In this document: piece after piece, positions 5,537 to 61,381 of the stretch
Position numbering within the stretch: position 1 is the stretch's first letter
Layout of the letters: each line of letters opens with the position of its first letter
From: Macrostomum lignano
Taxonomy: Eukaryota
NCBI GenBank assembly: GCA_002269645.1
Contig: NIVC01002427.1
Span: 1 to 64,000 of the forward strand
Reading direction: 5' to 3'
DNA: 64,000 bases
Made by a program: the position numbers and the translations under genes
The notes under the pieces: generated by a model
Databases searched by the model: none
Told to the model about the DNA's origin: nothing
The model's input: the letters and a program-made list of their open reading frames with translations, nothing else

Positions 5537-6913
5537 ATGTTTTCTGAAATGGAGCTAGACTATAGCTGGGCATCTTCCGTTGACACTCAGTTCAATGCAG
5601 CACCATTGCCTAGGCTAGAAATGATGCTAGCTAGTCCTGCCAGCAAAGGCAGCAGCACTCGAGGTGGCCATCGTGGAGGTCGCGGTAGTAAAACTTCCAC
5701 TGTCACCCCTAGAAGCTTGAATTATAGTGCAGCTTTGTCAACACCGTCACCTTCGCCTGTTGTGTACAGCGCCCTGACGTCACGTTTAGAGTTTGAGTCA
5801 CCGGAGCAATCAGCTAATAGTGGTGTCAATGGTAGCTACTGGTTCACCAAAAGTTCCGGCAGAGGTCGTGGGCGTCGGTTGCATTTTGTTAATTATAGTT
5901 CAGGAACTTGGCGATCAGAGCTAGGCGGCAATATCGCTTTTAATTCAGCTGAAGGCGAGGCTGAGCATGTTGACGAAGACTGTGCCAATATTGACTTGAA
6001 CCAATCAGTGATTGATTTAACCGACAGTGCCGATCAAGAATTGTGTAGCGCTGCTATTAGTCCGGATTGCCAATTAGTTAAAGAAACTGCTGCAGAGAGT
6101 AGCTGCGCACCACTTCAACAGCAGGAGTATTACATCATTGGACAATTTCCCGTACTGTTGGTATCTTGCGAGCAGGCAGGATTCTTAACTACTAACGAAC
6201 AGTCCTCCAGTTGTTCAATGCTGAATCTGCAGTCGGTGACTTATCAGCAGCCTAGCTATAATTCTGGCGCTGCTAGTCAGCCGGGCCGTCATCATCCTCA
6301 TCAGCAATCTAATTTTGTTTGCACAGACGATTGGAAACCAGATTTCAATACTAACGCTAATCGATCGTCTGAAATACTACTGGTTAAGCCATCGCCACAG
6401 CCGTCTCAGCAGCAGCAGGAGGAGCAGGCTCAGCAGTACCTGAAACAATGCCAGATAGATGCCCGCCTCGATTCGGGTTACGGCACCAGTCAAAGTTCCA
6501 GTTTAGTGGCTGGCTACTATGGATCTGAACAGTTGAGCCAGCAGCAAGTATTCTTTAACGAACAGTCAATGTTTTTGACTGGCGAACAACAGGCTGATAG
6601 GCGACAGGTGTGGTTGCCGAATCAGCAACTAACTAATGCTGAAACAATTATTCAACCTTCAGCCGAGATTGAGCCGCAGTATCCCACCTGCCAGCAGGGT
6701 GAGGCGGCAGACTTTTCCTTAGTCGAATTGAGCGTCTGCCAACCGAGCAGCGAATACGATAATTTAAACTCTTCAGCTGGTGCCTCCTCTCTTGGCAGTG
6801 TGCCAGCTATTTTGGGCGACTCCTTTTTCGATAATAATAATAACATTGGTGGTGATAAATCGCAATTCTTCGGCCTCTCCGCTGGCGCCAGTTTTGAATT
6901 AGCCGATTTATAA
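5537..6913 (+). CDS. Intronless 458-aa S/Q-rich low-complexity protein of unknown function
   Basis: 1377-bp non-repetitive ORF, richer in GC and CpG than its AT-rich flanks, with an ATG start. No domain recognised. Confidence 0.6.
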   Translation: MFSEMELDYSWASSVDTQFNAAPLPRLEMMLASPASKGSSTRGGHRGGRGSKTSTVTPRSLNYSAALSTPSPSPVVYSALTSRLEFESPEQSANSGVNGSYWFTKSSGRGRGRRLHFVNYSSGTWRSELGGNIAFNSAEGEAEHVDEDCANIDLNQSVIDLTDSADQELCSAAISPDCQLVKETAAESSCAPLQQQEYYIIGQFPVLLVSCEQAGFLTTNEQSSSCSMLNLQSVTYQQPSYNSGAASQPGRHHPHQQSNFVCTDDWKPDFNTNANRSSEILLVKPSPQPSQQQQEEQAQQYLKQCQIDARLDSGYGTSQSSSLVAGYYGSEQLSQQQVFFNEQSMFLTGEQQADRRQVWLPNQQLTNAETIIQPSAEIEPQYPTCQQGEAADFSLVELSVCQPSSEYDNLNSSAGASSLGSVPAILGDSFFDNNNNIGGDKSQFFGLSAGASFELADL

Positions 6914-13055: not shown

Positions 13056-16000
13056 ATGGATTCGAAACCGTCCTCGAAACTCAACTGTCGTCACTGCGGC
13101 AGCTCGGAGATCAACGAAGATCGAAGACGAGGCGACACAGTCTGCATGAACTGCGGCGCTGTGCTCGAGGAGGGTATGATTGTTAACGAGGTGGAGTTTC
13201 AGGACAGCGCCGCTGGCAGTGCTCAGGTTGGTTGTGTGCTTGCTTGTTAGTCCTGCTAGTGGATTGGAGGGTCGATAGGAAGTCAGACAGGAGAGTAGAT
13301 GTTCGAGTAGACAGGAGAGTAGATGTTGGAGTGTAGACAAGAGAGTAGATGTTGGAGCGGACAGAAGAGTAGATGTTGGAGTAGACAGGTGAGTAGTTGT
13401 TGGAGTAGACAGAAGAGTAGTTGTTGGAGTAGACAGAAAAGTAGATGTTGGAGTAGACAGAAAAGTAGATATTGGAGTAGACAGAAAAGTAGATGTTGGA
13501 GTAGACAGAAAAGTAGATGTTGGAGTAGACAGAAAAGTAGATGTTCGAGTAGACAGGAGAGTAGATGTTGGAGTGTCAAGAGAGTAAATGTTGGAGTGTA
13601 GACAAGAGAGTAGATGTTGGAGTAGACAGAAAAGTAGATGTTGGAGTAGACAGAAAAGTAGATGTTGGAGTAGACAGAAAAGTAGATATTGGAGTAGAAC
13701 GGAGAGTAAATATTAGATAAGAAGAAGAGTAGATGTTGGAGTAGAAAGGAGAGTAGATAGTACAGTTGATGTTGGAGTAGAATGAGAGTAGATAGGATAG
13801 ACAGGAGAGTAGATGTTGAGTAGAGGATAGAAAAGTAGACATGAAGTACTATAGACTAGTTAACAGAGTAGATGTAAAAAAATCTATAAAAGTACATCAG
13901 AGGAAATTGCTGTTGTGTGGCCTTGACTGCCCTTCCTGCCCTTCTCAAAAATATCCCAACTCCCACGCAGGTGATCGGACAGTTCATGGCCAATGACTCG
14001 TCCGGTTTCCTGCCGGGCAGCGCCAGTCTGGCCAGTAAGCTGGGCTTCCAGCGCGAGTCGCGACAGCTCACACTGAACAATGCGCGCCGCCGGCTGCAAC
14101 AGGTTGGCGGCCAGTTGCGCCTGACGCAGCACCAGATTGACATGGCCTATAATTTCTATCGGACAATATTGAACCGCGGCTGGACTCGAGGCCGGAAGGT
14201 GAATTACGTTATTGCCGCTTGCTTGTATATTGTCTGCCGGACTGAGGGCACGCATCATATGCTGCTGGATTTGAGCGACCTGCTGCAGGTTTGTGTGGCC
14301 AATTTTACTTTTTGCGTGTTTTTTAGTTGCTTGATTTAGTGAGCATTGGGTCCTTGTTGCATTCAAGCTGGGTCTTTGTTGCATTCAAGTCACTGTTTCT
14401 CGGGTCCTTGTAGCAGTTAAGTCACTGCTTCTTGGGTCTTTGTAGCATTTTGGTCACTGCTTCTTGGGTCTTTGTAGCATTTTGGTCACTGCTTCTCGGG
14501 TCTTTGTAGCATTTAGGTCAATGCTTTTTGGGTCTTTGTAGCATTAGGTCACTGCTTCTTTGGTCTTAGTAGCATTTTTGGTCACTGCTTCTTGGGTCTT
14601 TGTAGCATTTTGGTCACTGCTTCTTGGGTCTTTGTAGCATTTTGGTCACTGCTTCTCGGGTCTTTGTAGCATTTAGGTCAATGCTTTTTGGGTCTTTGTA
14701 CCATTAGGTCACTGCTTCTTTGGTCTTAGTAGCATTTTTGGTCACTGCTTCTTGGGTCTTTGTAGCATTTTGGTCACTGCTTCTTGGGTCTTTGTAGAAT
14801 TTAGGTCACTGCTTTTGAGGTCTTTGTAGCATTTTTGGTCACTGCTTCTTGGGTCTTTGTAGCATTTTGGTCACTGCTTCTTGGGTCTTTGTAGAATTTA
14901 GGTCACTGCTTTTGAGGTCTTTGTAGCATTTTTGGTCACTGCTTCTTGGGTCTTTGTAGCATTTTGGTCACTGCTTCTTGGGTCTTTGTAGAATTTAGGT
15001 CACTGCTTTTGAGGTCTTTGTAGCGTTTAAGTCACTGCGTCATTGTTACCTGGCCATTTGTAAATCACCTTGGCTTAAGTCTTTGTAAGTCAATTTTTCC
15101 TCAGGTCTTTATAGCGGGTAGATAATCATTCTCATTTCCCGGGTCTTTGTAGTGTTTGTTAGAATAGCCAATCCCCTAAAGTCTTTGTTGCCTGCTAAAG
15201 GTCAACTACCAGCTGTTTCTTTGCATTATTCTTACACCGCTCCTACTCCAGGTAAATGTGTACGTTCTGGGCCGCAGCTACACTGAGATAGCCAAGCGCC
15301 TGTGCATCAACATCCCAGCTCTGGATCCGTGCCTCTATATTCAACGATTCGCTCAGAAATTGGAGTTCGGCGACAAGTCCAGAGAGGTGGAAACCACCGC
15401 AATGCGACTGCTGCAGCGGATGAAGAAGGACTGGATTGCGGTGGGCAGGCGGCCGGCTGGCCTGGCCGCATCGGCCCTGCTGGTTGCCGGGCGGTTGCAT
15501 AACTATAATCGGACTGTTGAGGATGTAGCCAGGTTTGTGATTTTATCTCTGAATTCTGTTTTATTACCCCATTGGGATATTTGTACCTGACACTGTGCTC
15601 AAGATCCCCTATTGGGATATTTGTGTCTGACACTGTGCTCATGATCCCCTATTGGGATATTTGTGTGTCTGACACTGTACTTAAGATCCCCTATTGGGAT
15701 ATTTGTGTGTCTGACACTGTACTTAAGATCCCCTATTGGGATATTTGTGTCTGACACTGTGCTCAAGATCCCCTATTGGGATATTTGTATCTGACAGTGT
15801 TCAAGATCCCCTTATTGGGATATTTGTGTCTGACACTGCGCTCAAGATCCCCTATTGGGATATTTGTGTCTGTGTCTGACACTGTACTCAAGATCCCCAA
15901 TTATCCCCCATTGTGATATTTGTATCTGACACTGTTTTAAAGATCGACTATTGGGATACTTGTACCTGACACTGTGCTCAAGATCCCCTATTGGGATATT

Positions 16001-19000
16001 TGGTCAAATCCAAAGCCGCCCAAACCCGCCACAGAATCGCCAAGATCAGCGAGCAGACGGCGCGCAAGCGGCTGCAGGAGTTCGCCAAAACGCCCAGCTC
16101 CACCCTCACTATCGAGGAGTTTCTAAGCGTTGACTATGAAGGGGAGCACGATCCGCCCGCCTTCTTGGAGGGCCTCAAGCGGGCCACCACCGACCGGGAT
16201 GAGACCGATATGGACCGGATGTGCCAGGAGGTCGGCGAACTGGAGGCCCTCATCGATAGGGAGATGGAGAAGCTGCAGGTAAGAGTAGCCAGCCTCTCAG
16301 ATCCTCAGTTGCTGGGCCAGCTTCCCAGATCCTCAGCCTCCCTTAGTTGCGGAGCCAGCCTCCCAGATCCTCAGTTGCTGGACCAGCCTCCCAAATCCTC
16401 AGTTGCTGGGCCAGCCTCCCAGATCCTCAGTTGCTGGGCCAGCCTCCCAGAGTGTCAGTTGCTGGGCCAGCCTCCCAGATCCTCAGTTGCTGGGCCAGCC
16501 TCCCAGAGTGTCAGTTGCTGGGCCAGCCTCCCAGATCCTCAGTTGCTGGGCCAGCCTCCCAGATCCTCAGTTGCTGGGCCAGTCTCCCAGATCCTCAGTT
16601 GCTGGGCCAGTCTCCCAGATCCTCAGTTGCTGGGCCAGTCTCCCAGATCCTCAGTTGCTGGGCCAGTCTCCCAGATCCTCAGTTGCTGGTCCAGTCTCCC
16701 AGATCCTCAGTTGCTGGGCCAGCCTCCCAGATCCTCAGTTGCTGGGCCAGCCTCCCAGATCCTCAGTTGCTGGGCCAGCCTCTCAGATCCTCAGTTGCTG
16801 GACAGCCTACCAGCTACTCAAGCTATGCAGATAAAATCCAAGATTCACTCCACCGCACCCCAGGAGCGCCGAGTTCGCGGCATCGTCTCCGGTCTATTCG
16901 TAGTCGCTGGAACCGGCACCGCGGCGTCGACCTCTTCAGCAACGGCTGGCCAGCAGCCATCGACACCGGCAGAGCCGGCGGCCGCAGAAAAGCCAGACGT
17001 AAAGCCCGACGCTGCCGCTCAGTTTCTGTTGAACTGCGACGATGCCGAAGTGAATCTGAGCGCCCGGCACGTTCTGAAAGACGCCCTGGAAGGCGTTGTC
17101 GATGCCGAAGAGCTGGAATGCTGCGTCGACGATCTTCATCAGGCTGTCGGCGCTGGACCATCGTCTCAGCAGCAACAGGAGCAACAGCAGCCTCAGACTT
17201 CGTCGAGTTCTTTGACTAGATCTGCTGGTCACGGCGTCGACCATATGATGGCTGCCGTTGGTATCGACATGAAGCCGGCATTGAGTTCGCTCGCTCAGGC
17301 GCCTGGCATTATAACAAAATCTGAGTGTTACACTTCCATAGAAACTAAGGTATTGGCTCTTTGATTTGGAAAAATTATTGCCACTTTTAGATACTGGCTC
17401 CAGTTTTCCGAAGTCATATCGTGTTTTTGATAGCTTTTAACTTCCTGCAATGGAACCTGGTCCATTTCAAGGTCTCAAACTGGAACACTTCGAGGTCTTT
17501 GAGACTGTTGCGGTTGCTTCCAATGTCCTTCAAATGTCCTTATTGGTGTCTGGTTCCTTCCAATGTCCTTCAAATGTCCTTCATTGGTGTCTGATTGATT
17601 GATTCCCATATCCTTTGTAGGTATCCGGTTGATTCCAATGTCCTTCATTAGTGTCTGATTGATTCCCATATCCTTCATTGGTGTCTGGTTTCTTCCAATG
17701 TTCTTCAAATGTCCTTCATTGGTGTCTGGTTTCTTCCAATGTTCTTCAAATGTCCTTCATTGGTGTCTGGTTTCTTCCAATGTTCTTCAAATGTCCTTCA
17801 TTGGTGTCTGGTTTCTTCCAATGTTCTTCAAATGTCCTTCATTGGTGTCTGGTTTCTTCCAATGTCCTTCAAATTTCATTCGTTGGTGTCTGGTTTCTTC
17901 CAATATCCTTCATTGGTGTCTGGTTTCTTCCAATGTCCTTCATTGGTGTCTGATTGATTCCCATATCCTTTGTAGGTGTCCGGTTGATTCCAATGTCCTT
18001 CAAATATCCTTCATTGGTGTCTGGTTTCTTCTAATGTTCTTCAAATATCCTTCATTGGTGTCTGGTTTCTTCCAATGTCCTTCAAATGTCCTTCATTGGT
18101 GTCTGGTTTCTTCCAATGTCCTTCAAATGTCCTTCATTGTTGTTTGGTTACTTCCAATGTTCTACGTAGAATGTATATGTATACAAATGTCCCTTCGTTG
18201 GTGTCTGGTTTCTTCCAATGTCCTTCAAATGTCCTTAATTGTTTCCTGGTTGCTTCCAATGTCCTTAATTGGTGTCTGGTTGGTCCTAATGTCCTTCAAA
18301 TGTCCTTCATTGTTGTCTGTCCAACTTTGTCCAGTTGCTTTCAGTGTTCACCAGCGGTCTGATTGCTTTCACAGGCTTTAATTGTAGAGCATTTTTGCTC
18401 ACTTATTTAATTCTCAGCCGTTCTTGGCGCCAACGGACGACGCTGCCAACGACGGTGAGTTGAGTCTCGAAGGCATCGACGATGAGGAGCTGGAGCGGGA
18501 GTACCTGCTCAGCCGGCGAGAGGTGCTGATTAAAGCGCGCGACTGGTACCGGCGCAACGCCGACTGGCTGCGCGACACCGAGAAGCGTCGGGCGAAGCTG
18601 GCCGCTGTCGCCGCTGCCGCAGCCGCCGCCGCTTCAGGCGACCCGTCTGGCGTGGGCAGCGTCGACGTTGACGACGACGTCGCTCAGCTGGCGGCCGCCG
18701 CCTCCGCCACCGCTACGTCGGCGCCGAGACGGCGAACTAAACGAACAGCCCATGCTAGCGGCATTCAAACCACTGAGCAGGCGATTGAAGTGGCAATCAG
18801 GTTTGAGTTTGGGGAGCGATTGACAGGTTTTCGGTTTGGTTCTTTTAGTGTAGATAGCGTGAATTGGCCTCTGGGTACGTGGGCTGGTTAGTATTTATGA
18901 TAGTGGCTATTTAGGCTAGTAGGTATTTAAGCTAGTGAGTATTTAGACTAGATGGTATTTAGGCTAATGGGTATCTAGACTAGTGGGTATTTAGACTAGT

Positions 19001-24343: not shown

Positions 24344-26112
24344 ATGATTGACGATTTGAAAAGTGAGCAAGCCACTAAGCCGCCATCGGCTGTGTCGGCA
24401 TTCTGGCACAATATTTCTATGCGATACCAAGCAGCTCTAGACAAGTGCACACCATTCACTACTGGCCGATGGGTTGGGTTCTGCTTACTGTTCCTGCTGT
24501 TTGCTTTGCGAATTCTTTTAGTGCAGGTAAGTTTTTTATGGGGGTTGCAAATGTTCCACTTTTAGTCTGTTTGTGTATGGGATTAGAGTCGAGCTTAATC
24601 AGGGCTTTTAATTATAATAATATTTAGTTGTTCAAGTACCCCGAAATCAGAATTAAGCTGGAGATGATGAACACATCGAAATCATTATTAAAGTGGTGAC
24701 GATGAACACGCTGAAATCGTCATCTAGCTTGTGATAATGAGCACCCCGAAATCATCATCTAGCTGGTGATGGTGAGCACCCCGAAATCATCATCCAAGAA
24801 GAGATGATAAGCACCCCGAAATCATTTTTTCAGCTGGTTATGATGAGCACCCCGAAATGATCATCCAGCTGGTGATGATGAGCACCCCGAAATCATCATC
24901 TAGCTGGTGATGGTGAGCACCCCGAAATCATCATCCAAGAAGAGATGATAAGCACCCCGAAATCATTTTTTTCAGCTGGTTATGATGAGCACCCCGAAAT
25001 CATCATCTAGCTGGTGCTGGTGATGAGCACTCGAAATCATCATCCAGATGGAGATAATGGATATTTTAATTTTACGCTTGTGTACTTTTACCAATTAAAT
25101 TTTCATTCGCAATCAAAAGTGATATAAATTGACATTTGCCTTAATTCAATTCTCGCAGGGATTCTACATAATCGCCTACGCATTGGGTATCTACCTATTA
25201 AACCTGCTAATTGGTTTTCTGACCCCAATGGACGCCGTGTCGCTGGACGAGGACGGGCCCAGCCTGCCAACCAGGGCCAGCGAAGAGTTTCGGCCGTTCA
25301 TTCGAAGACTGCCGGAGTTCAAGTTCTGGTAGGCAGGCTGTAGTAGGGGGCTTTGGGGGCGTGCTCATGCTCACTGAGTGTTGTTTTGTCGATTGTAAGA
25401 AAATTTACTCAGTATTGAATCGAATGTAGTATTGACTTACGACTGAAAGGTCGGGGGTTCGATTCTCGACCGAGTTTTAACCATTTGTGTCCTTGAGCAA
25501 GATACTTAACTCTCTGCATTGCTTCAGTTCAGCCAGCTGTAAAATGGGTGCCAGCATTAGCTGGGGTAATTGAGGTGCAATCGCTTATTACTTTTACTGA
25601 CTATTAGAAGGTCAAAGAGCTGATACAGTACACCCTGCGTGAGCTTGTGTATGAGTGCGGTGCCCGCGTACAGTATTTGCGCTTTTGTATGTGCTCAGGG
25701 AATGGAAAGTGCTGTCTAGTAAAGGATTTACGAATTCGAATTAAATAAAAGTACACAACTTGCCCAACACCATGTCAGGTACTCTTCAACCAGGGCCACA
25801 GTGATCTCCCTGTTCTGCACTCTAGTGCCGGCATTCGACATACCAGTATTCTGGCCCATACTAGTTATGTACTTTTTCTTGCTGTTCACTCTGACTATGA
25901 AGCGACAGATTAAGGTGAGAAAGTTCACGTCTGATAAAATTGTCTATATAATTGCAGAAGCTAGAGTGAAGAAGATGATTTATAACTCAATTGTCCCCCC
26001 TCAGCACATGATCAAGCATCGTTACATTCCGTTCACCTACGGCAAGCCGCAGCACAAAGGACGCGAGGACAATGCAAGTCCTGTTGGAAGTCAGCACGCC
26101 GCTAAGTCCTAA
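24344..26112 (+). CDS. RER1: Golgi-ER retrieval receptor RER1, 4 exons
   Basis: Exons 24344-24526, 25159-25328, 25779-25914 and 26005-26112. Motifs [63 protein letters not shown] and [17 protein letters not shown]. Confidence 0.95.
24640..25060. repeat. About 35-bp degenerate palindromic minisatellite (GATGATGAGCACCCCGAAATCATCATC core), RER1 intron 1
   Basis: Tandem units. Confidence 0.85.
25405..25750 (+). mobile_element. tRNA-derived SINE with MIR/CORE-like central domain, RER1 intron 2
   Basis: B box GGTTCGATTC (25456-25465) lies in a T-arm-like hairpin. It is followed by GTGTCCTTGAGCAAGATACTTAACTCTCTG...TCAGTT...CTGTAAAATGGG, which closely resembles the MIR CORE consensus as recalled. 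Ends in an A-rich tail. Confidence 0.75.
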
Positions 26113-28867: not shown

Positions 28868-31800
28868 ATGGGCAATCAAGTTGGCAGTGTTAGCAGCGCG
28901 GAAGTCAATAATAAGTATAACCAATGCTTGCAAGATCTCACTGAGTACGAACTGCAGACTAAGCTTAAAGAGACTGCATTTTTTAAAGTTGTTCGATCGA
29001 GGTATGTTCTAAATGTCAAGTTTATTGATGTTTAATTACTGCAAATATTTTTCAGTATTACAGACAGTTTCTACTTGTTACCGCTTATTTTCAGACACTC
29101 GGAAGGCGATGTTGTGCTCAAGGTGTACATTCCGCCTAATTCTAGCGTACCCATAAAAGAGTATTTAGATCGTATTGACGCCCAGAAGAGGGTCTTTCCT
29201 AATCCTACCAATGCCAATGTCCTGCCCTATCAGAGGTAGGCAATTTCTGTTTGTGTGCAATGCAAATTATTAGTATACTGCATCTCATGGTTTGAGTATT
29301 TAACTGAATTAACAACTTTAATCAGAACTATAAACTCACTCTCACTGAATCACTCTAAAGTACAATAAGTACTCTGAGACACCACATTAAAATGCAATAG
29401 GTACTCTGAGACACCACACTGAAGTACAATAAGTACTCTGAAACACCACACAGAAGTACAATAAGTACTCTGAAACATCACTCTAAAGTACAATAAGTAC
29501 TCTAAAACACCACACTGAAGTACAATAAGTACTCTGAGACACCACACTGAAGTACAATATGTACTCTGAAACACCACACTGAAGTACAATAAGTACTCTG
29601 AAACATCACTCTAAAGTACAATAGGTACTCTAAAACACCACACTAAAGTACAACAAGTACTCCGAGACAGCACACTGAAGTACAATATGTACTCTGAGAC
29701 ATCATACAACCCCCACTACAGATGCCATTATTCGGAGCGCTACGCCTGTCTAGTGCGTCAGTTTGTAAAGTACAGCCTCTACGATAGAATGGACACTCGG
29801 CCGTTTCTATTGGACGTAGAGAAGCGTTGGATCGCCTTCCAGCTATTGTGTGCAATCGCTACGCTAAACAAAGTGTCACTGTGTCACGGCGATATTAAAA
29901 GTGAAAACGTCCTGCTCACTAGTTGGGGCTGGGTACTATTGACGGATTTCGCTCCTTTTAAACCCGTATTTTTGCCAGACGATAATCCGGCAGATTATAG
30001 CTTCTATTTTGACATTTCTGGTCGAAGGACTTGCTACATTGCCCCTGAGCGATTCTATCATGCTAATCGATCTTCCGCTTATGGTAAGGCAGCGGCTGCT
30101 TCTGCTAGTGGAGTCGCTTCAACCGCTGCTGTCGAGCCCGATGCAGACTTTGGCCTCAGTCAAAAACAACAGAATGTGGTAGGCACATTTCTTAGAAACT
30201 GTGGTGTTTTCAAGGCTTATTAAAATTGTGTTTCTATTTTAACAAACCAAAATATAGTTACATCCGCTTTCAGTTCACTTTTAAAGTCACGTACATCGTA
30301 ATTTTGTAAGCGCGGATGAAATTTGCATTTCTTAGAAACCGTGTTTTTGAAGGCTGCTTCTTTATTAAAAAAGATAGTAACGTCACACTCATTTATCAGC
30401 TCACTTTAAATTTTAATAAGTTTAAATAAATTCATAGTTTAATATTTATTTCGCTGTCAGGCCTTGAAAGTTAAGCAATATTAGCCCGGGTTAGTTAGTA
30501 CTTAGTTATCATCATATCTAAAATTTGATTTTATATTGAAAACTAACAGAAACGCGGACAACTGGAGCACAGCATGGATGTGTTCTCCGCTGGATGCGTA
30601 CTATTAGAACTGTTTAGCGAAGATTCCAATAGTCAGCCATTCGATCTGTCTCAATTGTTGGCATTTAAAAAAGATCAATACACGCCTACTAAACTGATAC
30701 TGCGACTGGCGGATGAGAATATTCGGGTGAGAATTTGACTCTTACCATTATGGTTCGTAACTTGACTGATCCTAATGAATTCGCGCCTCTAAAATACCAC
30801 AATGGCACCCTTTATGATGCCCCAATGACACCCTTTATGATTTCCCCAATGACACCCTTTATGATGCCCCAATGACACCCTTTATGATTTCCCCAAGGAC
30901 ACCCTTTATGATGCCCCAATGGCACCCTTTATGATGCCCCAATGACACTCTTTACCCCAATGACACCCTTTATGATGCCCCAATGACACCCTTTATGATT
31001 TCCCCAATGACACCCTTTATGATGCCCCAATGACACCCTTTATGATTTCCCCAAGGACACCCTTTATGATGCCCCAATGGCACCCTTTATGATGCCCCAA
31101 TGACACCCTTTATGATGCCCCAATGGCACCCTTTATGATGCCCCAATGACACTCTTTACCCCAATGACACCCTTTATGATGCCCCAATGACACCCTTTAT
31201 GATGCCCCAATGACACCCTTTATGATGCCGCAATGACACCCTTATTGATGCCCCAATGGCACCCTTTATGATGCCCCAATGACACCCTTATTGATGCCCC
31301 AATGACACTCTTTATGATGCCGCAATGACACCCCTTATGATGCCACCATGACACCCATCACTGTGCCACCATGACACCCATCACAGTGCCATCATGACAC
31401 CCATCACAGTGCCACCATGACACCAATCACAGTGCCACCATGACACCCATCACAGTGCCATCATGACACCCATCACAGTGCCATCATGACACCCATCACA
31501 GTGCCACCATGACACCCATCACTGTGCCACCATGACACCCATCACAGTGCCATCATGACACCCATCACAGTGCCACCATGACACCAATCAGAGTGCCACC
31601 ATGACACCCATCACAGTGCCACCATGACACCCATCACTGTGCCACCATGACACCCATCACTGTGCCACCATGACACCCATCACTGTGCCACCATGACACC
31701 CATCACTGTGCCACCATGACACCCATCACAGTGTCACCATGACACCCATCACAGTGCCACCATGACACCCATCACAGTGTCACCTTGACACCCATCACAG

Positions 31801-34800
31801 TGCCATCATGACACCCATCACTGTGCCACCATGACACCCATCACAGTGTCACCATGACACCCATCACAGTGCCATCATGACACCCATCACAGTGCCATCA
31901 TGACACCCATCACAGTGCCACCATGACACCCATCACAGTGCCACCATGACACCAATCACAGTGTCACCATGACACCCATCACAGTGCCATCATGACACCC
32001 ATCACAGTGCCATCATGACACCCATCACTGTGCCATCATGACACCCATCACAGTGCCACCATGACACCCATCACTGTGCCACCATGACACCCATCACTGT
32101 GCCACCATGACACCCATCACTGTGCCATCATGCACCCATCACAGTGCCATCATGACACCCATCACAGTGCCACCATGACACCCATCACAGTGCCACCATG
32201 ACACCAATCACAGTGTCACCATGACACCCATCACAGTGCCATCATGACACCCATCACAGTGCCATCATGACACCCATCACAGTGCCATCATGACACCCAT
32301 CACAGTGCCACCATGACACCCATCACAGTGCCATCATGACACCCATCACTGTGCCACCATGACACCCATCACTGTGCCACCATGACACCCATCACTGTGC
32401 CACCATGACACCCATCACTGTGCCACCATGACACCCATCACTGTGCCACCATGACACCCATCACTGTGCCACCATGACACCCATCACAGTGCCATCATGA
32501 CACCCATCACAGTGTCACCATGACGCCCTCAAATAGCTTCTAAAGGAAAAAATAAATTAAAAAAGCTGGTTAACCAACCAGGACCTGATCACCACCATGC
32601 TGAGCAAAGAACCGCTGAGTCGCCTATCTGGCGAGGAGCTGCTCATTCAACAGCGAGGCAAAGCGTTCCCGGACTATTTTTACACCTTTCTAAAGACCTA
32701 CTTGGCCCCGTTCGCCTCGGAGATACAGCTGCCGGATGATAAGATTGCTAGACTGAAGAAGTAAGGGCTTGGTTGAGTTGTTTACTCAGTTATCGAATAC
32801 TCATTTCAACAAAGCTCGAGCTAAAAAATCTTCGGGCTTGTAAATCTTCGAGTTTGTGAAGCTTCAAGGTTGTGAATCTTCGAGCTTGTGAAGCTTCAAG
32901 GTTGTGAATCTTCGAGGTTGTGAAGCTTCAAGGTTGTGAATCTTCGAGCTTGTGAAGCTTCAAGGTTGTGAATCTTCGAGCTTGTGAAGCTTCAAGGTTG
33001 TGAATCTTCGAGCTTGTGAAGCTTCAAGGTTGTGAATCTTCGAGCTTGTGAAGCTTCAAGGTTGTGAATCTTCGAGTTTGTGAAGCTTCAAGGTTGTGAA
33101 TCTTCGAGCTTGTGAAGCTTCAAGGTTGTGAATCTTCGAGTTTGTGAAGCTTCAAGGTTGTGAATCTTCGAGCTTGTGAAGCTTCAAGGTTGTGAAGCTT
33201 CAAGGTTGTGAATCTTCGAGCTTGTGAAGCTTCAAGGTTGTGAAGCTTCGAGCTTGTGAAGCTTCAAGGTTGTGAAGCTTCAAGGTTGTGAATCTTCGAG
33301 CTTGTGAAGCTTCAAGGTTGTGAATCTTCGAGCTTGTGAAGCTTGAGTTTGTGAATCTTGGAGTTTGTGAATCTTTGAATTTGTGAATCTTTAGGCTTGT
33401 GAATCTTCAGGCTTGTGAATCTTCAGGCTTATGAATCTTCAGGTTTGTGAATCTTCAGGTTTGTGAATCTTCAGGCTTGTGAATCTTCAAGCTTGTGAAT
33501 CTTCGAGATTGTGAATCTTCAGGCTTGTGTGAATCTTCGAACTTGTGAATCTTCAAGATTGTGAATCTTCAGGCTTGTGAATCTTCGAGCTTGTGGATAT
33601 TCAGGCGTGTGAAGCTTTGCGCTTGTGAATCTTCAGGCTTGTGAATCTTCGGGCTTGTGAATCTTCGAACTTGTGAATATTCAGGCTTGTGAAGCTTTGA
33701 GCTTGTGAATCTTCAGGTCGGCAAACATCCCGTCGGGCAGTGCCCTTGTCGAAACCGAAGTTAGATAGTTTGAAATACAATTAAAAATCAATATCTACTC
33801 ACCTAAAAGACATTGTGAGCATTGATATTCCATTTACGAGTGTATATTCTCTTGACACAACTTTCAGAGCCCTATTCACCCAGAGTCACATTGCAAAGTT
33901 TCTCATATTGGATAGCGACAAGAAGTCCGAACGGAACGTTGGATTAGTAATCATTTTGAACTTGTTGACCTCGTCAGTTCGGCACGTTCGCTTTGCCCAA
34001 TCGAAACTGGACGGTTTGAAGTGCTTGGAGAAACTGGCCTGCCATCTGCCTGATCACATCGTGCTCGACCGGATACTGCCGTATATTGTGAGCTTCTCCC
34101 AGAATCCTCATTTAATCCTTCATCAATCTGCTCAACAGAATCCCTAGTTATCTCTTCATTACCTGCCTGTTTCTTTATCATCATCACCAGCATGTTCCAC
34201 AGAATCCCTCTATTCATCATCATCATCACCAGCATGTTTCACAGAATCCCTCTATTATCCTTCATCATCATCACCAGGCTGTTCCCCAGAATCCCTCTAT
34301 TATCCTTCATCATTATCACCAACCTGTTCCCCAGAATCCCTCTATTATCCTTCATCATTATCACCAACCTGTTCCCCAGAATCCCTCTATTATCCTTCAT
34401 CATCATCACCAGTATGTTCCCCAGAATCCCTCTATTATCCTTCATCATCATCACCAGCATGTTCCCTAGAATCCCTCTATTATCCTTCATCATCATCACC
34501 AGCATGTTCCCCAGAATCCCTCTATTATCCTTCATCATCATCACCAGCATGTTCCCCAGAATCCCTCTATTATCCTTCATCATCATCACCAGCATGTTTC
34601 ACAGAATCCCTCTATTATCCTTCATCATCATCACCAGGCTGTTCCCCAGAATCCCTCTATTATCCTTCATCATTATCACCAACCTGTTCCCCAGAATCCC
34701 TCTATTATCCTTCATCATTATCACCAACCTGTTCCCCAGAATCCCTCTATTATCCTTCATCATTATCACCAACCTGTTCCCCAGAATCCCTCTATTATCC

Positions 34801-37800: not shown

Positions 37801-39276
37801 AGGACTCGGCGGGGGGCAGTGGGGACGAGTCGGGCGCTGCCGCTGACGGTGAGGACTGAGTCGCCCTCCCAGATCCTCAGTTGCTGGGCCAGCCTCCCAG
37901 ATCCTCAGTTGCTGGGCCAGCCTACCAGAGTGTCAGTTGCTGGGCCAGCCTCCCAAATCCTCAGTTGCTGGGCCAGCCCCCCAGATCCTCAGTTACTGGG
38001 CCAGCCTCCCAGATCCTCAGTTACTGGGCCAGCCTCCCAGATCCTCAGTTACTGGGCCAGCCTCCCAGATCCTCAGTTACTGGGCCAGCCTCCCAGATCC
38101 TCAGTTACTGGGCCAGCCTCCCAGATCCTCAGTTACTGGGCCAGCCTCCCAGATCCTCAGTTACTGGGCCAGCCTCCCAGATCCTCAGTTACTGGGCCAG
38201 CCTCCCATATCCTCAGTTGCTGGGCCAGCCTCCCAGATCCTCAGTTGCTGGGCCAGCCTCCCAGATCCTCAGTTGCTGCTCTCCCTAAGCCCGCAACCAC
38301 TCAGCAACCCCTGCAAGACCTCCCCCGCCCCGCCCCGCAGGCCCTCAGCAGCCGTGCTACGCCAGGCTAGAGGAGGACGCGGCCGCCCTCCTAGCCAAAC
38401 TCGGCCACCTCGGCCTGGAAGAATCCATGGAGGATCGCCTGTTGGCGCTGCGCGACCTGGCGCTGAAGCAGACGACCGCCAGCTCCGCAGCCGCATTGTC
38501 AACGCCGTCAGTGTCGTCCGCCGCGGTTGATTACATCGGCGTCGAACGCTTGAAGCTGTCGGATTTGGCAACTGTGACCGAGCAGCAGTCGGTGCTGCCC
38601 AGGCATCTGTCTCTGTCAGCCACTGGCGTGACGGTCTCGGCGTCGAATGTCGTCGCTGCGTCGGTCTTGGCTGGCCAGCCTGCGGCATCATCGCTGGCCT
38701 CGATGGGTGCAGCGGCGCCGGCGGCGTCTCTTGGGGCGACTGCCGCTAGCGACTTCGCTTCCGGGTCTTCGGTTGCAGTTGCCGGATCGTCGCCGTCTGC
38801 AGGTGGCGGAGCTCCGGCGGGTTCCGTTTCCATAGCAACCACTGCCGCCGCTGGTGTTGTCCTGCCGCCAGCCTCCGGCCGGTGCGCAACCTGCCGCACC
38901 GACCTGGACAACCTGCTGGCCAGACGGCGGGCCGAGTACGGCCTGTTGAATTCGATTGCCTCGTCTGTCAGCTATTCGAACTCGTCTGCGGGCGGATCGC
39001 TGGCCAGTGCCGCTTTCCCCGGCTGCGACACCTGGACACCGAAGGGCGTGCTGGTGAATCACATATCCGAGCACCGAGGCCGGATTAACAGCTTGTCAGT
39101 GTCCGCTGATCACCGGGCCTTCGCTACGGCATCCGACGATGCCACGGTTCGATTGTGGGATCTGTCAGATTGTCACAAGAATCCCGACCAGTGCGTGAGC
39201 GGCAAGTCTAAGCTGACCTATGCTGACTTCCCGTCCCGTGTGCTGGGCGCTTACTGGCAGGTGAGGCTGTGTGTGC

Positions 39277-56600: not shown

Positions 56601-56893
56601 AAAAACCTTACATCTCTCTTAGCATTCCGCCTAAAGAATGTTTTGCACGACTCGCACGTGGCCACGCCAAAGTTCTTCCCAGAGGCCAGCAGATCGCAGA
56701 CGAGGCACTTCGCTCCGGCCTTCAACGTCGACTGGCGACCCCGCCTACCTCGTCGACGCGGCGGAGGTGACGGCGACGGCGCAGCTGCGAAATCTTCGCC
56801 ATTCAGACCAGCAACAGAATCCTCTGCGCCCGTAGGGTCAGCCGGGTTCTGCCAATTACTGTCATCTTCGTTGAATTCCACGAATTCGCCCAT
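50694..56893 (-). CDS. Nuclear hormone receptor, HR96/DAF-12 (NR1J)-like, 6 coding exons
   Basis: Exons 56893-56612, 55266 (or 55257)-55143, 54433-53980, 53209-52969, 51948-51598 and 50906-50694. DBD CLVC...GKNFGVATCESCKTFFRRNAK / CLHQNSCNISKEYRRSCTSCRLNKCFAVGM. LBD SYDYDRDAW (HR96 has YDDDRAAW) and AF2-like PLMQEL. Confidence 0.85.
50935..51415. repeat. About 28-bp minisatellite (GTGTCTAAAAGAGGCGATTTTTCCAGGT), NR intron 5
   Basis: Tandem units. Confidence 0.9.
52070..52968. repeat. 20-bp minisatellite (TGGATTACCGAATGTCTGAC), NR intron 4
   Basis: About 45 units, starting at the first nucleotide of the intron. Confidence 0.95.
53240..53975. repeat. About 75-85-bp tandem repeat, NR intron 3
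   Basis: GGGTCAATGAGTCAATAAGCTACTGACTGACCCACCTC...GACTCACTGTCACACCCC units in two alternating variants. Confidence 0.9.
54480..54960. repeat. Degenerate about 47-bp repeat (GGGATTTTGAAGCTAAATTTCGGGATTT...), NR intron 2
   Basis: Recurrent motif. Confidence 0.75.
55380..56510. repeat. Purine-rich 24-bp minisatellite (GGGAAGGAGGCTGGGAGAATGATG), NR intron 1
   Basis: Tandem units; produces the artefactual GKEAGRMM and HHSPSLLP ORFs. Confidence 0.9.
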
Positions 56894-56997
56894 TGCCACA
56901 GATTTGGCTATTTTGCTGTGGTGCGGGACATGCAATGATAATTGTTGGAATTCGCTTGGGTCAGGCTCAGCTCCGAGCTGTGTTGTTGCTGGGGCTT

Positions 56998-57523
56998 AGT
57001 TCAAAGATCTGGGAGGCTGGCCCAGCAACTGAGGAACTGGGAGGCTGGCTCCGCAACTGAGGGAGGCTGAGGATCTGGGAAGCTGGCCCAACAACTGAGG
57101 ATCTGGAAGGCTGGTCCAGCAACTGAGACTCTTGGAGACTGGCCCAGCAACTGAGGATCTGGGAGGCTGGCCCAGCAACTGAGGATCTGGGAGGCTGGTC
57201 CAGCAACTGAGGATCTGGGAGGCTGGTGGCCCAGCAACTGAGGATCTGGGAGGCTGGCCTAGCAACTGAGGATCTGGGAGGCTGGCCCAGCAACTGAGGA
57301 TCTGGGAGGCTGGTCCAGCAACTGAGGATCTGGGAGGCTGGTGGCCAGCAACTGAGGATCTGGGAGGCTGGCCCAGCAACTGAGGATCTGGGAGGCTGGT
57401 GGCCCAGCAACTGAGGATCTGGGAGGCTGGCCCAGCAACTGAGGATCTGGGAGGCTGACCTAGCAACTGAGGATCTGGGAGGTTGGCCCAGCAACTGAGG
57501 ATCTGGGAGGCTGGCCTAGCAAC
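56998..57523 (-). repeat. 28-bp minisatellite family A, upstream of the first NR coding exon
   Basis: Reverse complement of the BRF1/VPS15 unit. Confidence 0.95.
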
Positions 57524-57559
57524 AGGAGACGCTGGGAGAACTGTGAGTCTGCCAGACTC

Positions 57560-60500
57560 ACAGGAGACAACTTAAATAGGCATCAGCATGAATCAGTTAG
57601 CAGCAATTTGACTAGAGTATGTTTTTTCACTTCAGTTCTCAATAACAAGAAAAAAAATCTGCTTCAAAGCTGTTTCCAATAATCAGTGAATAAAACGCTA
57701 TTCTATGATGAAAATCTCCTTATAGCTCTCCTGTGTTCGGGGACATGGGGGTCGAAGTGAGGCTAACAAAAGGTTAGAATTTTTTTAGCAGATGACTCAT
57801 CGGAACTAAGCAGAGGAAATAAAACGGTGACAAGAGACACTTGAAGAAATTTGGTTGACTGAATAACTGATTACATAATAACATGACTATGTTAGGAATC
57901 CATTCTATTGATTGAATCTTGCACATCTAATTCACTAGACTAGATATTGAGACTCTTACCCAAAGCTTGCATACAATTTTAACAAAAGCTCGCCAATCTA
58001 TCTCTCACCCTATCTTAGAATTGTCAATCAATTGATTAGTGACCCCAGCTTGCTTTAGATTTGATCTGTGATAACCTTAGCGGTATCATCAGCTTCTAGT
58101 CTAGTCTAGCAGTTAAAACCTGCCAAACAAATATAGGAACCTGTACAACATGTAAGAACCTGTCCAACAGGTAAGAACCTGTCTAACAGGTAAGAGCCTG
58201 TCTAAAAGGTTACAGGTAAGAACCTGTCTAACAGGTAAGAACCTGTCTAACAGGTAAGAACCTGTCTAACAGGTAAGAACCTGTCTAACAGGTAAGAACC
58301 TGTCTAACAGGTAAGAACCTGTCTAACAGGTAAGAACCTGTCTAACAGGTAAGAACCTGTCTAACAGGTAAGAACCTGTCTAACAGGTAAGAACCTGTCT
58401 AACAGGTAAGAACCTGTCTAACAGGTAAGAACCTGTCTAACAGGTAAGAGCCTGTCCAACAGGTAAGGACCTATCTAACAGTTATAAGAGCCTGTCTAAT
58501 AGGTAAGAACCTTTTTAACAGATATAGGAACCTGTCTCACAAAAAAGCTGTCTAACAGATATAAAGGTTGTCTCAACAGGTAAGAACCTGCAAAACAGAT
58601 ATAAATAGTCTGTCTAATAGGTAAAAACCTGTCTAACAGTTATAAGAGCCAGTCTAACAAATATAAGAGCTTGTCTAATAGGTAAAAACTTATATAATGC
58701 GTATAAGAGCTTCTCTAATAGGTTAAAAACCTATCTAACAGGTATAAAAGCCTGTCTATTAGGCAAAAACCAACAAATAAGAACAAATAAGAACTTATCA
58801 AACAAATAAGAACATATCTAAAGATATGCATGGCTTCTTTTTGATCAAAATGTGCAGGGCCCCTCCAGATTTCTTTATAAAATAGTCACCATTTAGTCAA
58901 TTTAAATTGACGCCAAAACTGAGAAACATATTTTGTTTTAATACTTGTATTTTCTATAATATTTTACGCAAACTAATTTTTGTTTAAACTAGCAGTAAAT
59001 TTTAGGATAAATAGAAGCGTTTTCGGCAGAGGAGAGACCAACCACGCGCATTGCCATTCACTAATGAAATAGCTATAGCAAAGAATAAGAGTTCCAAGAA
59101 AATAAGAATTGAAGAATTGTTTTCTGTGTTAATTCCTTTTAAGAAGTAAGATTGAAATAGACTGAAGAGTATACATTACATACTATTGAGAAGCAGCAAT
59201 ATTGAGTAGTAAGAGAATATGAAGTAGATCTGAAGTGATACGTGTAAGAATAACCGGAGGCTATGACCCTCTGATCTCAATAACGCCCAAGGACTTGCAA
59301 AGTATATGGAATACATATACCAGTATAGCCAATAGAACACTCAGGCCAAAAGTACAGTAAACACTACTGGAATCAGAATAAACGCTACTAGAATAACAGA
59401 GGAATAAAATCTTTAAGGGCTAATAGTTTTCTAAGAATAATACTCAGACTAAATACTCAGACTAAATACTCAGATATATACTCAGACCCATTCTAAGAAA
59501 CATTTCTTGGATTATTCCAAGATTGATAAATTCATAATTTATTAATAGGATAATCATGGTGGCAGCTACCAACATTTATAAAACAGGAGTTTAGCCCTTT
59601 GACAACTTAGTGACAGCTGTGAAATCATTTGAAAAGACAGAAGAAACACACCTGTGACAACTTGGTGGCAGCTAGTAAGGCTAAACAAAAGAATAATTAA
59701 GAGCCCTGGGACAAAGATTTTGCTTTTTTACATATATAGAGACTATACAAAACTTGAACTTGGTCAGTAACGTAACCAGAAATTTGTTAAAGGAAGGGGC
59801 AGATTCTAGAGAATAAGACCTAAGGTGGTAGAAGAAATAGCTCTATATCTAAGTAAAATTCACTTGGTTCCCCCTTTAATTTCTTTGGTTTTTTCCTAAG
59901 GGAAAAGCAACTATCCTCAACCTCCAGTTGAATGACTGAATTTGGTCCTACCTCCTACCTATCTATTATCTTAGCAATCTCTATTCTATATTTTGCCAAA
60001 CATTTCTATATGCTGAAATTCTATCTATGGCATATATGTAACTATACTATCTCGTTTAAGTCTAGTTTAAGCCTAAGATTAAGAAGAATCATAATTAAAA
60101 TTTAATAATTTTAAGTATAGATTGCAAAAAAGCCAAAAATAATTATTCTTGTGTAATTTATGATATAAAAATATGCCAATAGGCAATGACTATGTTTATG
60201 ATATCTAAAAAACAGTAAAATTAGTAATAGAACTTTAAACTAAAGACAAAAATTTATCATTTTTTGATATATATAGATAGACCTTATTAATATTAGTCAT
60301 TAGTTTGCCTTTTTAAATGGTTCCAAAGTTGATAAAATTAAATTGAAAATAAATAGCTAGGCATAGGGCCTATCTCTAAAAATATAAATTATTTGATTGA
60401 TAGAAATTTTAATAGGCATATCTAGCACCATTTTATTAAGAATGTATTTTTTTATTTTAAAACAAAATTTGTTTAAAAAATTCAGTATTCATATTTGCAA

Positions 60501-60700: not shown

Positions 60701-61051
60701 CTGCTCTGATACTATGATAGAAAGAAAGATGCTCGCATGTTTAGTAATAGTCTATATATATATCGATAAGAGTATGTATATATACGATAAGAGTATGACC
60801 TTCATTGCTATTTCGTATTTTGCAATAATTGCGTTCTTTAAAAATTCAACTTGTAACTTAAATTTCTATATATAAGGTACGTAAAATGATCATTTATCAA
60901 TTGCAACAATCAAGTCTGTTTTTACTTAAAATGAAGGCACTATTTTTCAAAAAAACTGTTAAAAATTTAAGTTACACTGCTATGAGCGAATTTTAAGGGC
61001 ACACTGTCCTCTGGTCTCAGGATTAAGTGGATAGTTTTTCGGCCTTTTAAA

Positions 61052-61381
61052 TATGTACTCTAAAAAATTCAATGTGTAAACAAACAAATAATCGAATGAT
61101 CCGAACTTCCGGAATTATACTTTATTTAATTATAATTATAAAAAGCGCCTGCGTAGATAGTTAGAAGAATATATATTGGGCGCTCTTCATAGAAATTGCT
61201 ATGCCTGGGCTTTATGTATGTACTCTAAAAAATTCAATGTGTAAACAAACAAATAATCGAATGATCCGAACTTCCGGAATTATACTTTATTTAATTATAA
61301 TTATAAAAAGCGCCTGCGTAGATAGTTAGAAGAATATATATTGGGCGCTCTTCATAGAAATTGCTATGCCTGGGCTTTATG
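61052..61381. repeat. Perfect 165-bp tandem duplication
   Basis: 61052-61216 is identical to 61217-61381 by eye; each unit starts and ends with TATG. Confidence 0.9.

What the first reader, a model, noticed from the sequence alone, without database searches (positions are those of the whole stretch)
16287..16805. The same 28-bp minisatellite in three different genes, with a shared rare variant block: a mobile tandem repeat
Family A occurs in BRF1 intron 4, VPS15 intron 9 (37862-38280) and upstream of the NR exon (56998-57523, inverted). In all three cases it is in the sense orientation of the host gene. An irregular roughly 50-bp block (TGGGCCAGCTTCCCAGATCCTCAGCCTCCCT(T/C)AGTTGCGGAGCCAGCCTCCC) is shared by 16313-16365 and 57039-57090 with one mismatch. 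A CAGAGTGTCAG-type variant recurs in all three. No shared flanks, TIRs or TSDs are visible, so whole array segments appear to be copied without a classical TE, for example via eccDNA or rolling circle, ectopic gene conversion, or RNA-templated insertion. The unit folds through CCCAG/CTGGG.
Basis: partly seen in the sequence, partly recalled or inferred. Interest (0 to 1): 0.7.

Follow-up and report, generated by a model that had tools for sequence, protein, structure and literature searches.

The report
Shared minisatellite in three flatworm introns
One 28-bp tandem repeat sits in spliced-out regions of three unrelated neighbouring genes of the flatworm Macrostomum lignano; the three arrays come from one ancestral array, so it is a dispersed minisatellite family, a known kind of repeat whose copying mechanism is not settled here.

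Summary
The unit CCTCAGTTGCTGGGCCAGCCTCCCAGAT forms three arrays, at 16287-16825 (+), 37862-38280 (+) and 57000-57544 (-): 45 matches against 0 expected. The window is Macrostomum lignano assembly Mlig_3_7, contig NIVC01002427.1. Arrays 1 and 2 almost fill canonical GT-AG introns of BRF1 and VPS15. Array 3 lies in a 5'UTR intron or outron of a nuclear-receptor gene. All three are in host-gene sense.

A 52-nt irregular block is shared by arrays 1 and 3 with one mismatch. It carries a 10-bp insertion and two rare substitutions, which shows common descent. I found no TIRs, convincing TSDs or shared 5' flanks. Folding is no better than in shuffled sequence.

Each array has since homogenised its own variants. 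The same family is read through in two other M. lignano gene models.

Context: 33 minisatellite arrays make up 33% of the window, and several other families are distantly related to each other.

Most likely this is a young dispersed minisatellite copied at the DNA level and then expanded inside introns. TE cargo remains a serious rival. It is a new member of a known kind, of moderate interest.

The parts
16287..16825 (+). Family-A array 1. About 18 units of 28 bp plus a degenerate last unit. It fills BRF1 intron 4.
   Evidence: TRF 16341-16820, 17.2 copies, 93% matches. Unit table. It has a private run of five CCAGTCTCC units.
16279..16830 (+). BRF1 intron holding array 1: GTAAGA...TGCAG, 552 nt, phase 0, no in-frame stop. 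The array starts 9 nt after the GT.
   Evidence: Sequence. ORF 15991-17364 reads through it. Exons on both sides are BRF1. The annotated 786-aa product can be reached only with this intron removed.
16313..16364 (+). Irregular block in array 1. It combines the C>T variant CAGCTTCCC, a 10-bp insert TCAGCCTCCC and a GCTGGG>GCGGAG unit.
   Evidence: Matches 57090-57039 (-) at 51 of 52 positions.
37862..38280 (+). Family-A array 2, about 15 units, with a private run of eight AGTTACTGG units.
   Evidence: TRF 37865-38278, 14.8 copies, 95% matches. Unit table; variants.
37849..38340 (+). VPS15 intron holding array 2: GTGAGG...CGCAG, 492 nt, phase 1, with an in-frame TGA at 37857.
   Evidence: Sequence. 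Frames of the flanking ORFs. VPS15 helical/HEAT exons lie upstream and WD40 exons downstream.
38285..38307 (+). 3' flank shared with array 3: CTAAGCCCGCAACCACTCAGC.
   Evidence: Local alignment beat all 300 shuffles. The pattern CTAAGCCC N0-4 GCAAC occurs only here and at 56985-56999, against 0 expected.
57000..57544 (-). Family-A array 3, about 18 units. It has a four-unit (115-bp) higher-order period and private CCACCAGCC 3-bp-insert units.
   Evidence: TRF 57006-57523, periods 28 and 115. Unit table; variants.
57039..57090 (-). The same irregular block, lying near the 3' end of array 3.
56975..56999 (-). 3' flank shared with array 2: CTAAGCCCCAGCAACAACACAGC.
56916..57560 (-). Putative 5'UTR intron or outron of the nuclear-receptor gene. 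It runs from GTGAGT at about 57560 to CACAG at 56916, and the ATG is at 56893. The boundaries are inferred.
   Evidence: Sequence. The zf-C4 exon 56588-56935 (-) is identified. There is no RNA evidence.

Best explanation
Family A is a young, dispersed minisatellite family of Macrostomum lignano.

Shown:
- The three arrays descend from one already heterogeneous ancestral array.
- Each lies in a spliced-out segment of a different gene and occupies almost the whole intron, leaving only the splice-site-proximal bases.
- After copying, each array turned over on its own by unequal exchange or slippage. Evidence is the private variant runs and a four-unit higher-order repeat in array 3.

Inferred:
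- The copying step was at the DNA level and did not use a transposase. A break in a short intron, or in a resident intronic array, was repaired from an ectopic family-A array. That would be interlocus gene conversion or template switching seeded by short shared cores, or reintegration of an array-derived circle.
- The repair copied a stretch of units together with the array's degenerate 3' edge.
- The arrays persist because they are removed with the intron and carry no strong splice donors.
- Sense orientation is a by-product of chance or of selection on the pre-mRNA, not part of the mechanism.
For: Same unit in three loci only: 45 hits against 0 expected. Arrays are 91-94% identical.

Shared derived characters: a 52-nt block with one mismatch, colinear over 109 nt. 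GAGTG, AAATCC, GGA and GTC variants are shared between arrays.

Arrays 2 and 3 share a 23-nt degenerate 3' edge that is unique in the window.

Private homogenised runs: eight AGTTACTGG units in array 2, five CCAGTCTCC units in array 1, and a 115-bp higher-order repeat in array 3.

No TIR and no shared 5' flank.

Canonical introns with consistent phase.

Three copies lie within 41 kb, and only two further M. lignano gene models read through this repeat among 1.8 billion representative proteins. That hints at modest copy number and local spread.

Other families in the window are also related in pairs beyond chance: 18 pairs at p<=0.01 against about 5 expected. Examples are 40062/54514 and 37185/50935. 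This fits repeated inter-intron spread followed by divergence.

The same two mechanisms are proposed for euchromatic satellites in Drosophila (PMC7403614) and Tribolium (PMC11610590).
Against: The copying step is not observed. There are only three copies and no empty site.

The shared 3' edge of arrays 2 and 3 could equally be the terminus of a decayed mobile element.

The eccDNA signature described in PMC7403614 (truncated first and last units that add up to one monomer) is not clearly present, because the array ends are degenerate.

Genome-wide copy number is unknown, so three copies in 64 kb could be chance if the family is very abundant.

All three copies being in sense is not predicted by a DNA-level mechanism, although n = 3.
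Confidence: 0.5

Rival explanations
1. TE cargo. Family A is the internal tandem-repeat module of a non-autonomous mobile element, such as a Helentron/HINE-like element or a tandem-repeat-containing MITE. The element inserted into short introns. Array expansion and decay have erased most of its termini.
For: Arrays 2 and 3 share a 23-nt non-unit stretch at the same offset 3' of the array, and it occurs nowhere else in the window. That is what a conserved element end would look like. Helentron-borne satDNA-like arrays dispersed through a genome are documented in the oyster (PMC7492417), and one Tribolium satDNA is associated with TE-like sequence (PMC11610590).
Against: No shared 5' flank, no TIR and no convincing TSD. 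Array 1 lacks the 3' motif and leaves only 9 nt before and about 8-25 nt after the array inside its intron. The shared stretch itself looks like degenerate units rather than a foreign module. No Helitron-type CTRR end with a hairpin lies at the homology boundary (read).
Confidence: 0.28
2. RNA-mediated intron-to-intron spread. Excised intron RNA carrying the array is reverse-spliced or reverse-transcribed and inserted into other transcription units, always in sense.
For: All three arrays are in host-gene sense, and each almost fills a spliced-out segment. Several older related family pairs between the + strand genes and the - strand NR gene are also sense-to-sense. An active-looking LINE reverse transcriptase lies in the window.
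Against: Three of three in sense has p of about 0.125-0.25. Homology does not extend to the 5' splice-site-proximal bases. It ends at different distances from the 3' splice site, 33 nt in array 2 against about 60 nt in array 3, and not at a common branch-point distance. There is no poly(A) or other retroposition mark. The two extra sense cases are biased by how they were found.
Confidence: 0.06
3. Very abundant genome-wide family. Family A, like other families here, has thousands of arrays, and three in one 64-kb window is chance co-occurrence. The apparent local clustering then says nothing about mechanism.
For: Tandem and simple repeats make up 15% of the M. lignano assembly (PMC5730564) and 33% of this window. 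Other families in the window also have relatives in other introns. The family is present at two or more other loci.
Against: Only 2 of the M. lignano gene models in a 1.8-billion-protein library read through this all-frames-open repeat. Of 33 arrays in the window, only family A recurs at above 90% identity.
Confidence: 0.12
4. Independent origin of the three arrays, or an assembly artefact.
For: None specific. Many families here share short cores, so some similarity can arise from common motifs.
Against: A 52-nt block with a 10-bp insertion and two rare substitutions is shared with one mismatch. Each array is 400-550 bp, embedded between unique coding exons, and carries its own variant pattern in a long-read assembly (PMC5730564).
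Confidence: 0.02

Closest known systems
Euchromatic dispersed satellite DNAs of Drosophila (1.688, Rsp-like) and Tribolium (Cast1-9), thought to spread by eccDNA reintegration, interlocus gene conversion or TEs (PMC7403614, PMC11610590, PMC4675708)
   Same: One tandem-repeat family forms short arrays at several gene-rich loci, including introns. Arrays share variants between loci and then homogenise locally. TE hallmarks are absent at many junctions.
   Different: The unit is 28 bp (a minisatellite), not 100-360 bp. No heterochromatic source array is known. Each array fills a whole small intron. eccDNA has not been tested. The truncated-ends signature is not seen.
Helentron/HINE-borne and MITE-borne tandem repeats of bivalves (Cg_HINE; PMC7492417)
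   Same: Short satDNA-like arrays are dispersed through genes. Two of the three copies here share a short stretch next to the array.
   Different: There are no conserved left and right flanking modules, no Helitron-type termini and no TIR or TSD. One copy has no room for termini inside its intron.
Introners (intron-generating elements of algae, fungi, tunicates and others)
   Same: Related sequence makes up nearly the whole of several introns in unrelated genes, in sense orientation.
   Different: Homology covers only the repeat, not the splice-site-proximal ends. Only 3 (+2) copies are known. No TSD or TIR was found. Nothing shows that these introns are new rather than old short introns inflated by an array.
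Classical single-locus hypervariable minisatellites (VNTRs)
   Same: Unit of 10-100 bp, head-to-tail arrays of about 15-20 units, internal variant maps with local runs, and degenerate edges.
   Different: The family is multi-locus with demonstrable common descent. All copies are intronic.

Membership tests
Dispersed tandem-repeat (satDNA-like/minisatellite) family | Head-to-tail arrays of one monomer | tested here: met
   TRF finds period 28, 15-17 copies and 89-95% matches at three sites.
Dispersed tandem-repeat (satDNA-like/minisatellite) family | The same monomer at several non-adjacent loci with unrelated flanks | tested here: met
   Three loci in three genes. Two further M. lignano gene models carry it. 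The 5' flanks are unrelated.
Dispersed tandem-repeat (satDNA-like/minisatellite) family | Identity by descent between loci, shown by shared rare variants | tested here: met
   A 52-nt block with an indel matches at 51 of 52 positions and is colinear over 109 nt.
eccDNA-mediated satDNA spread | The first and last monomers are truncated and together make one monomer (PMC7403614) | tested here: inconclusive
   Arrays 1 and 2 start near unit position 12-17 and stop being clean near position 10-11. Degenerate units continue beyond both ends, so the boundaries cannot be fixed.
eccDNA-mediated satDNA spread | The family is present in the extrachromosomal circular DNA fraction | not testable with these tools
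   This needs Circle-seq or 2D gels on M. lignano DNA.
Non-autonomous TE with internal tandem repeats (HINE/Helitron, TR-MITE) | Conserved non-repeat modules on both sides of the array in all copies | tested here: not met
   The 5' flanks have no similarity above shuffles. On the 3' side only arrays 2 and 3 share 23 nt, and array 1 does not.
Non-autonomous TE with internal tandem repeats (HINE/Helitron, TR-MITE) | Terminal inverted repeats, or Helitron-type ends (5' TC, 3' hairpin plus CTRR), and target-site features | tested here: not met
   Upstream against reverse-complemented downstream alignments are no better than shuffles. No CTRR end lies at the homology boundary (read). With only three copies, weak TSDs cannot be excluded.
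Introner | The element spans the whole intron including its splice sites, in many near-identical copies | tested here: not met
   Homology is confined to the array. The 9-20 nt after the GT and the last 8-60 nt before the AG differ. Only 3 (+2) copies are known.
Introner | The introns are lineage-specific gains, absent from orthologues | not tested
   No orthologous or homeologous gene structures could be fetched.
Structured RNA or DNA element | Folding more stable than shuffled sequence, or a match to a known RNA family | tested here: not met
   z = -1.9 for four DNA units and z = -0.6 for the intron as RNA. There are no Rfam hits in the window.

The most novel reading that the evidence does not exclude
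Minisatellite arrays in M. lignano spread from intron to intron by a transcription- or splicing-coupled route, for example reverse-transcribed or reverse-spliced intron RNA. That would explain why family A, and several older related family pairs between + strand and - strand genes, sit in host-gene sense and fill whole introns. It would be a TE-independent way of inflating, and possibly creating, introns.
Probability: 0.06. Interest if true: 0.85.

Novelty: new member of a known kind. Interest (0 to 1): 0.35.

Why it matters
Tandem repeats make up about 15% of the M. lignano genome (PMC5730564) and a third of this gene-dense window, mostly as one private array per intron. Family A shows by shared derived characters that such arrays are not always born in place. 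They can be copied between introns of unrelated genes.

If a genome-wide survey confirmed this, it would explain part of how this model flatworm's introns and genome became so repeat-rich. It would also give a tractable case, with short units and datable variant maps, for studying how tandem repeats move without obvious transposons.

There is a practical side too. All three forward frames of the unit are open, and two UniProt gene models already read into it.

Tried and rejected
External scans for the unit found nothing. I searched JGI metagenome contigs twice, viral contigs and prokaryotic genomes. No accessible DNA collection holds Macrostomum sequence.

Protein-level searches with the array translation found only two M. 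lignano UniProt models. Neither has a contig on record.

I tried to fetch homeologous copies of the locus to look for empty sites. The one contiguous annotated ORF (458 aa) exists on this contig only. The M. lignano reverse-transcriptase relatives are UniRef-only and have no contigs.

A search for half-units or solo units elsewhere in the window gave 3 hits, which is within the shuffle range. A splice acceptor at 34863-34879 resembles the AAATCC variant, but not significantly.

The apparent similarity to the 45-bp family at 34173 dissolved once the real units were read.

I considered a circular-permutation or terminal-redundancy reading of array 1, because the CTCTCAG variant occurs at both ends. 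I did not adopt it, because the following units differ.

I considered a weak 5' resemblance between arrays 2 and 3 (GACT.A after GTGAG) and rejected it as within chance.

Literature searches for Macrostomum intronic minisatellites, satellite DNA or introners found nothing specific.
Full report
**Where the window comes from**

A contiguous 458-aa ORF of the window (5537-6913) is annotated on NCBI record GCA_002269645.1, contig NIVC01002427.1. This is the Macrostomum lignano Mlig_3_7 assembly, and the window is positions 1-64000 of a 174,892-bp contig. The LINE reverse-transcriptase ORF at 62237-63910 agrees: its named relatives are all M. lignano.

**The observation**

TRF finds 28-bp arrays with one consensus, CCTCAGTTGCTGGGCCAGCCTCCCAGAT:
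- 16341-16820
- 37865-38278
- 57006-57523, inverted

The unit matches 45 times at up to 3 mismatches, all inside these three arrays, against 0 in 100 shuffles. Self-blastn gives 91-94% identity over 410-450 bp. Of the 33 arrays in the window, only this family recurs at distant loci at that stringency.

The irregular block is real. Positions 16313-16364 and 57090-57039 (reverse complement) match at 51 of 52 positions, and colinearity extends to 109 nt at 102/109 without gaps. The block combines three derived characters:
- a C>T change (CAGCTTCCC)
- a 10-bp insertion (TCAGCCTCCC)
- a GCTGGG>GCGGAG unit

CAGCTTCCC occurs only at these two places in the window. The 10-bp insert occurs there and at one further site inside array 3, and nowhere else. 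Independent origin is therefore excluded for arrays 1 and 3.

Array 2 shares the GAGTG and AAATCC variants with array 1. Array 3 shares the GGA and GTC variants with array 1.

**Host genes and intron status**

*Array 1.* The exon ending at 16278 aligns to yeast Brf1 residues 247-313. The exon at 18424-18891 carries the Brf1 TBP-binding domain. The annotated gene starting at 13056 has Zn-ribbon, TFIIB and BRF1 domains and a 786-aa product.

Array 1 lies in a GTAAGA...TGCAG intron, 16279-16830. The intron is 552 nt, phase 0, with no in-frame stop. I enumerated GT-AG models across the seven ORF blocks. The results were:
- 741-859 aa with this intron removed, a range that includes 786
- 925-1043 aa with it retained

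The annotation therefore treats it as an intron. By my reconstruction it is intron 4.

*Array 2.* It lies in a GTGAGG...CGCAG intron, 37849-38340, 492 nt and phase 1. Kinase and VPS15-helical/HEAT exons lie upstream and WD40 exons downstream.

*Array 3.* It lies on the minus strand between a GTGAGT at about 57560 and a CACAG acceptor at 56916, upstream of the ATG at 56893. That exon encodes the first zinc finger of a nuclear-receptor DNA-binding domain. Whether this is a 5'UTR intron or a trans-splicing outron is inferred, not shown.

In all three cases the array is in host-gene sense. It starts 9-20 nt after the GT and runs to within about 8-95 nt of the AG, so the array makes up almost the whole spliced-out segment.

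**Flanks**

Alignment of 150-nt flanks against shuffles shows no shared 5' flank and no terminal inverted repeat. Arrays 2 and 3, however, share CTAAGCCC(CA)GCAAC.AC.CAGC at the same offset just 3' of the last clean unit, with 0 of 300 shuffles reaching the score. The pattern CTAAGCCC N0-4 GCAAC occurs only at these two places in the window, both in sense, against 0 expected.

Read closely, the stretch looks like old, degenerate units. It may include an inverted fragment of the unit (CCCAGCAAC against GTTGCTGGG). So what was copied included the array's degenerate 3' edge. Beyond about 23 nt the two flanks are unrelated. Array 1 lacks the stretch.

**After copying**

Each array has its own homogenised variants:
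- array 2: eight consecutive AGTTACTGG units
- array 1: five CCAGTCTCC units
- array 3: CCACCAGCC three-base-insert units spaced in a 115-bp four-unit higher-order repeat

The shared block lies at the 5' edge of array 1 and near the 3' edge of array 3. The simplest explanation is expansion on opposite sides of the block after copying.

**Folding**

The unit contains the palindrome GCTGG(G)CCAGC. Four DNA units fold with z = -1.9, and the whole intron as RNA with z = -0.6, relative to dinucleotide shuffles. No Rfam family matches anywhere in the window. The folding remark adds nothing.

**Elsewhere in the genome**

All three forward frames of the unit are open, so I searched proteins with the array translation. 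Two M. lignano UniProt gene models read into the same repeat:
- A0A1I8J1R5, ARL3-like, whose C-terminus is the array translation with a GATG variant
- A0A1I8JRP3, whose N-terminus is a degenerate array

The family is therefore present at two or more further loci. This detection route only finds sense copies, so it says nothing about orientation. No DNA could be retrieved for either model. No accessible nucleotide collection contains the unit.

**Context in the window**

There are 33 minisatellite arrays, with a median length of 543 bp. They cover 33% of the window and 41% of its genic part, typically one private family per intron. This fits the 15% simple and tandem repeat content reported for the assembly (PMC5730564).

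The families are not independent of each other. In an all-against-all comparison of 32 consensus units, 18 pairs reach p<=0.01 against about 5 expected. Examples:
- 40062 (VPS15, +) with 54514 (NR gene, inverted), related over the full unit length
- 37185 (+) with 50935 (inverted)
- the adjacent pair 30800 and 31341

Short cores such as GACACC/GGTGTC, AAATCCC and CCCAGA recur across families, mostly on the sense strand. The array next to array 3 (55574-56490) shares CTCCCAGA(C)TCCT with family A. I read family A as the youngest visible case of a more general process of copying between introns followed by divergence. This reading is an inference.

**Mechanism**

Shown: common descent, intronic residence, independent local turnover, and absence of TIRs and of shared 5' modules.

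Inferred: the way the copy was made. My ranking is:

1. **DNA-level, transposase-free copying (about 0.5).** This would be ectopic templated break repair or interlocus gene conversion seeded by short shared cores, or reintegration of array-derived circles. These are the mechanisms proposed for euchromatic satellites in Drosophila and Tribolium (PMC7403614, PMC11610590). In its favour are the lack of TE hallmarks, the inclusion of a degenerate array edge, and three copies within 41 kb while the family seems rare in gene models.
2. **Cargo of a decayed non-autonomous element (about 0.28).** This follows the oyster Helentron precedent (PMC7492417) and is kept alive by the 3' stretch shared by arrays 2 and 3.
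3. **Chance co-occurrence of a very abundant family (about 0.12).** This would remove the local-clustering argument without excluding either copying route.
4. **An RNA- or splicing-coupled route (about 0.06).** It would explain sense orientation, but it has no specific support. Homology does not reach the splice sites, and three of three in sense is not significant.

Convergence and misassembly are effectively excluded.

**Verdict**

This is a real multi-locus minisatellite family with demonstrable identity by descent, and in kind it is a new member of the known class of dispersed euchromatic tandem repeats. The held literature has no description of it for Macrostomum. The decisive tests are a genome-wide census and an empty-site comparison in homeologues or sister species. 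Neither could be run here.

Noticed in passing
window 7000-58900: 33 different minisatellite arrays (units 15-72 bp, median array 543 bp) cover 33% of the window and about 41% of its genic part. Typically one private family almost fills each intron of BRF1, Rer1, VPS15 and the nuclear-receptor gene.
   Followed up: partly
window 40062-40513 (+) vs 54514-54961 (-); 37185-37396 (+) vs 50935-51410 (-); 30800-31379 vs 31341-32528: Other minisatellite families are related to each other over whole units. 18 pairs reach p<=0.01 against about 5 expected. The pairs between the + strand VPS15 gene and the - strand NR gene are inverted, so they are sense-to-sense. This suggests older inter-intron spreads.
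   Followed up: partly
window, consensus units of about 30 arrays: Short cores recur across families far more than in shuffled units, with a strand bias relative to the host gene. GACAC/GTGTC occurs in about 10 families. AAATCC/AATCCC occurs in 5-8 families, always on the sense strand. CCCCA and TCCCC score 7 against 0. The cause (common ancestry, a hotspot motif, or selection on pre-mRNA) is unknown.
   Followed up: no
window 55574-56490 (-): The 24-bp array in the next NR intron shares CTCCCAGA(C)TCCT and CCAGCCTCC with family A, with 0 of 300 shuffles reaching the score for each. It may be a diverged relative.
   Followed up: no
window 16279-16830: The BRF1 intron filled by array 1 is 552 nt, phase 0 and open in frame, so retention would add 184 residues without a stop. 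All three forward frames of the unit are open. Two UniProt M. lignano models (A0A1I8J1R5, A0A1I8JRP3) read into this repeat, probably as annotation errors.
   Followed up: partly
window 62237-63910 (+): A LINE-type reverse-transcriptase ORF (RVT_1, E = 6e-29) lies in a 62-66% GC block. Its relatives carry an exonuclease/endonuclease domain (PF03372) and include M. lignano proteins at 62-83% identity, as well as unnamed metagenome proteins at up to 84%.
   Followed up: partly
window 61046-61375: A 165-bp segment is duplicated in tandem at 99-100% identity in AT-rich intergenic DNA just upstream of the LINE.
   Followed up: no
window 24638-25059: The 35-bp minisatellite in the first Rer1 intron has an internally palindromic unit (TCATCATCA...TGATGATGA). 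It shares CTGGTGATGATGA, inverted, with the 45-bp VPS15 array at 34173-34833.
   Followed up: no
window 34863-34879: The 3' splice site after the 45-bp array reads TCCCAAATCCTCAG|CTG, close to the AAATCC variant of family A (TCCCAAATCCTCAGTTG). The number of such hits is within the shuffle range.
   Followed up: yes
window 5537-6913 (+): An annotated single-exon gene of 458 aa has no Pfam match and no identical copy on any other contig of the collection.
   Followed up: no
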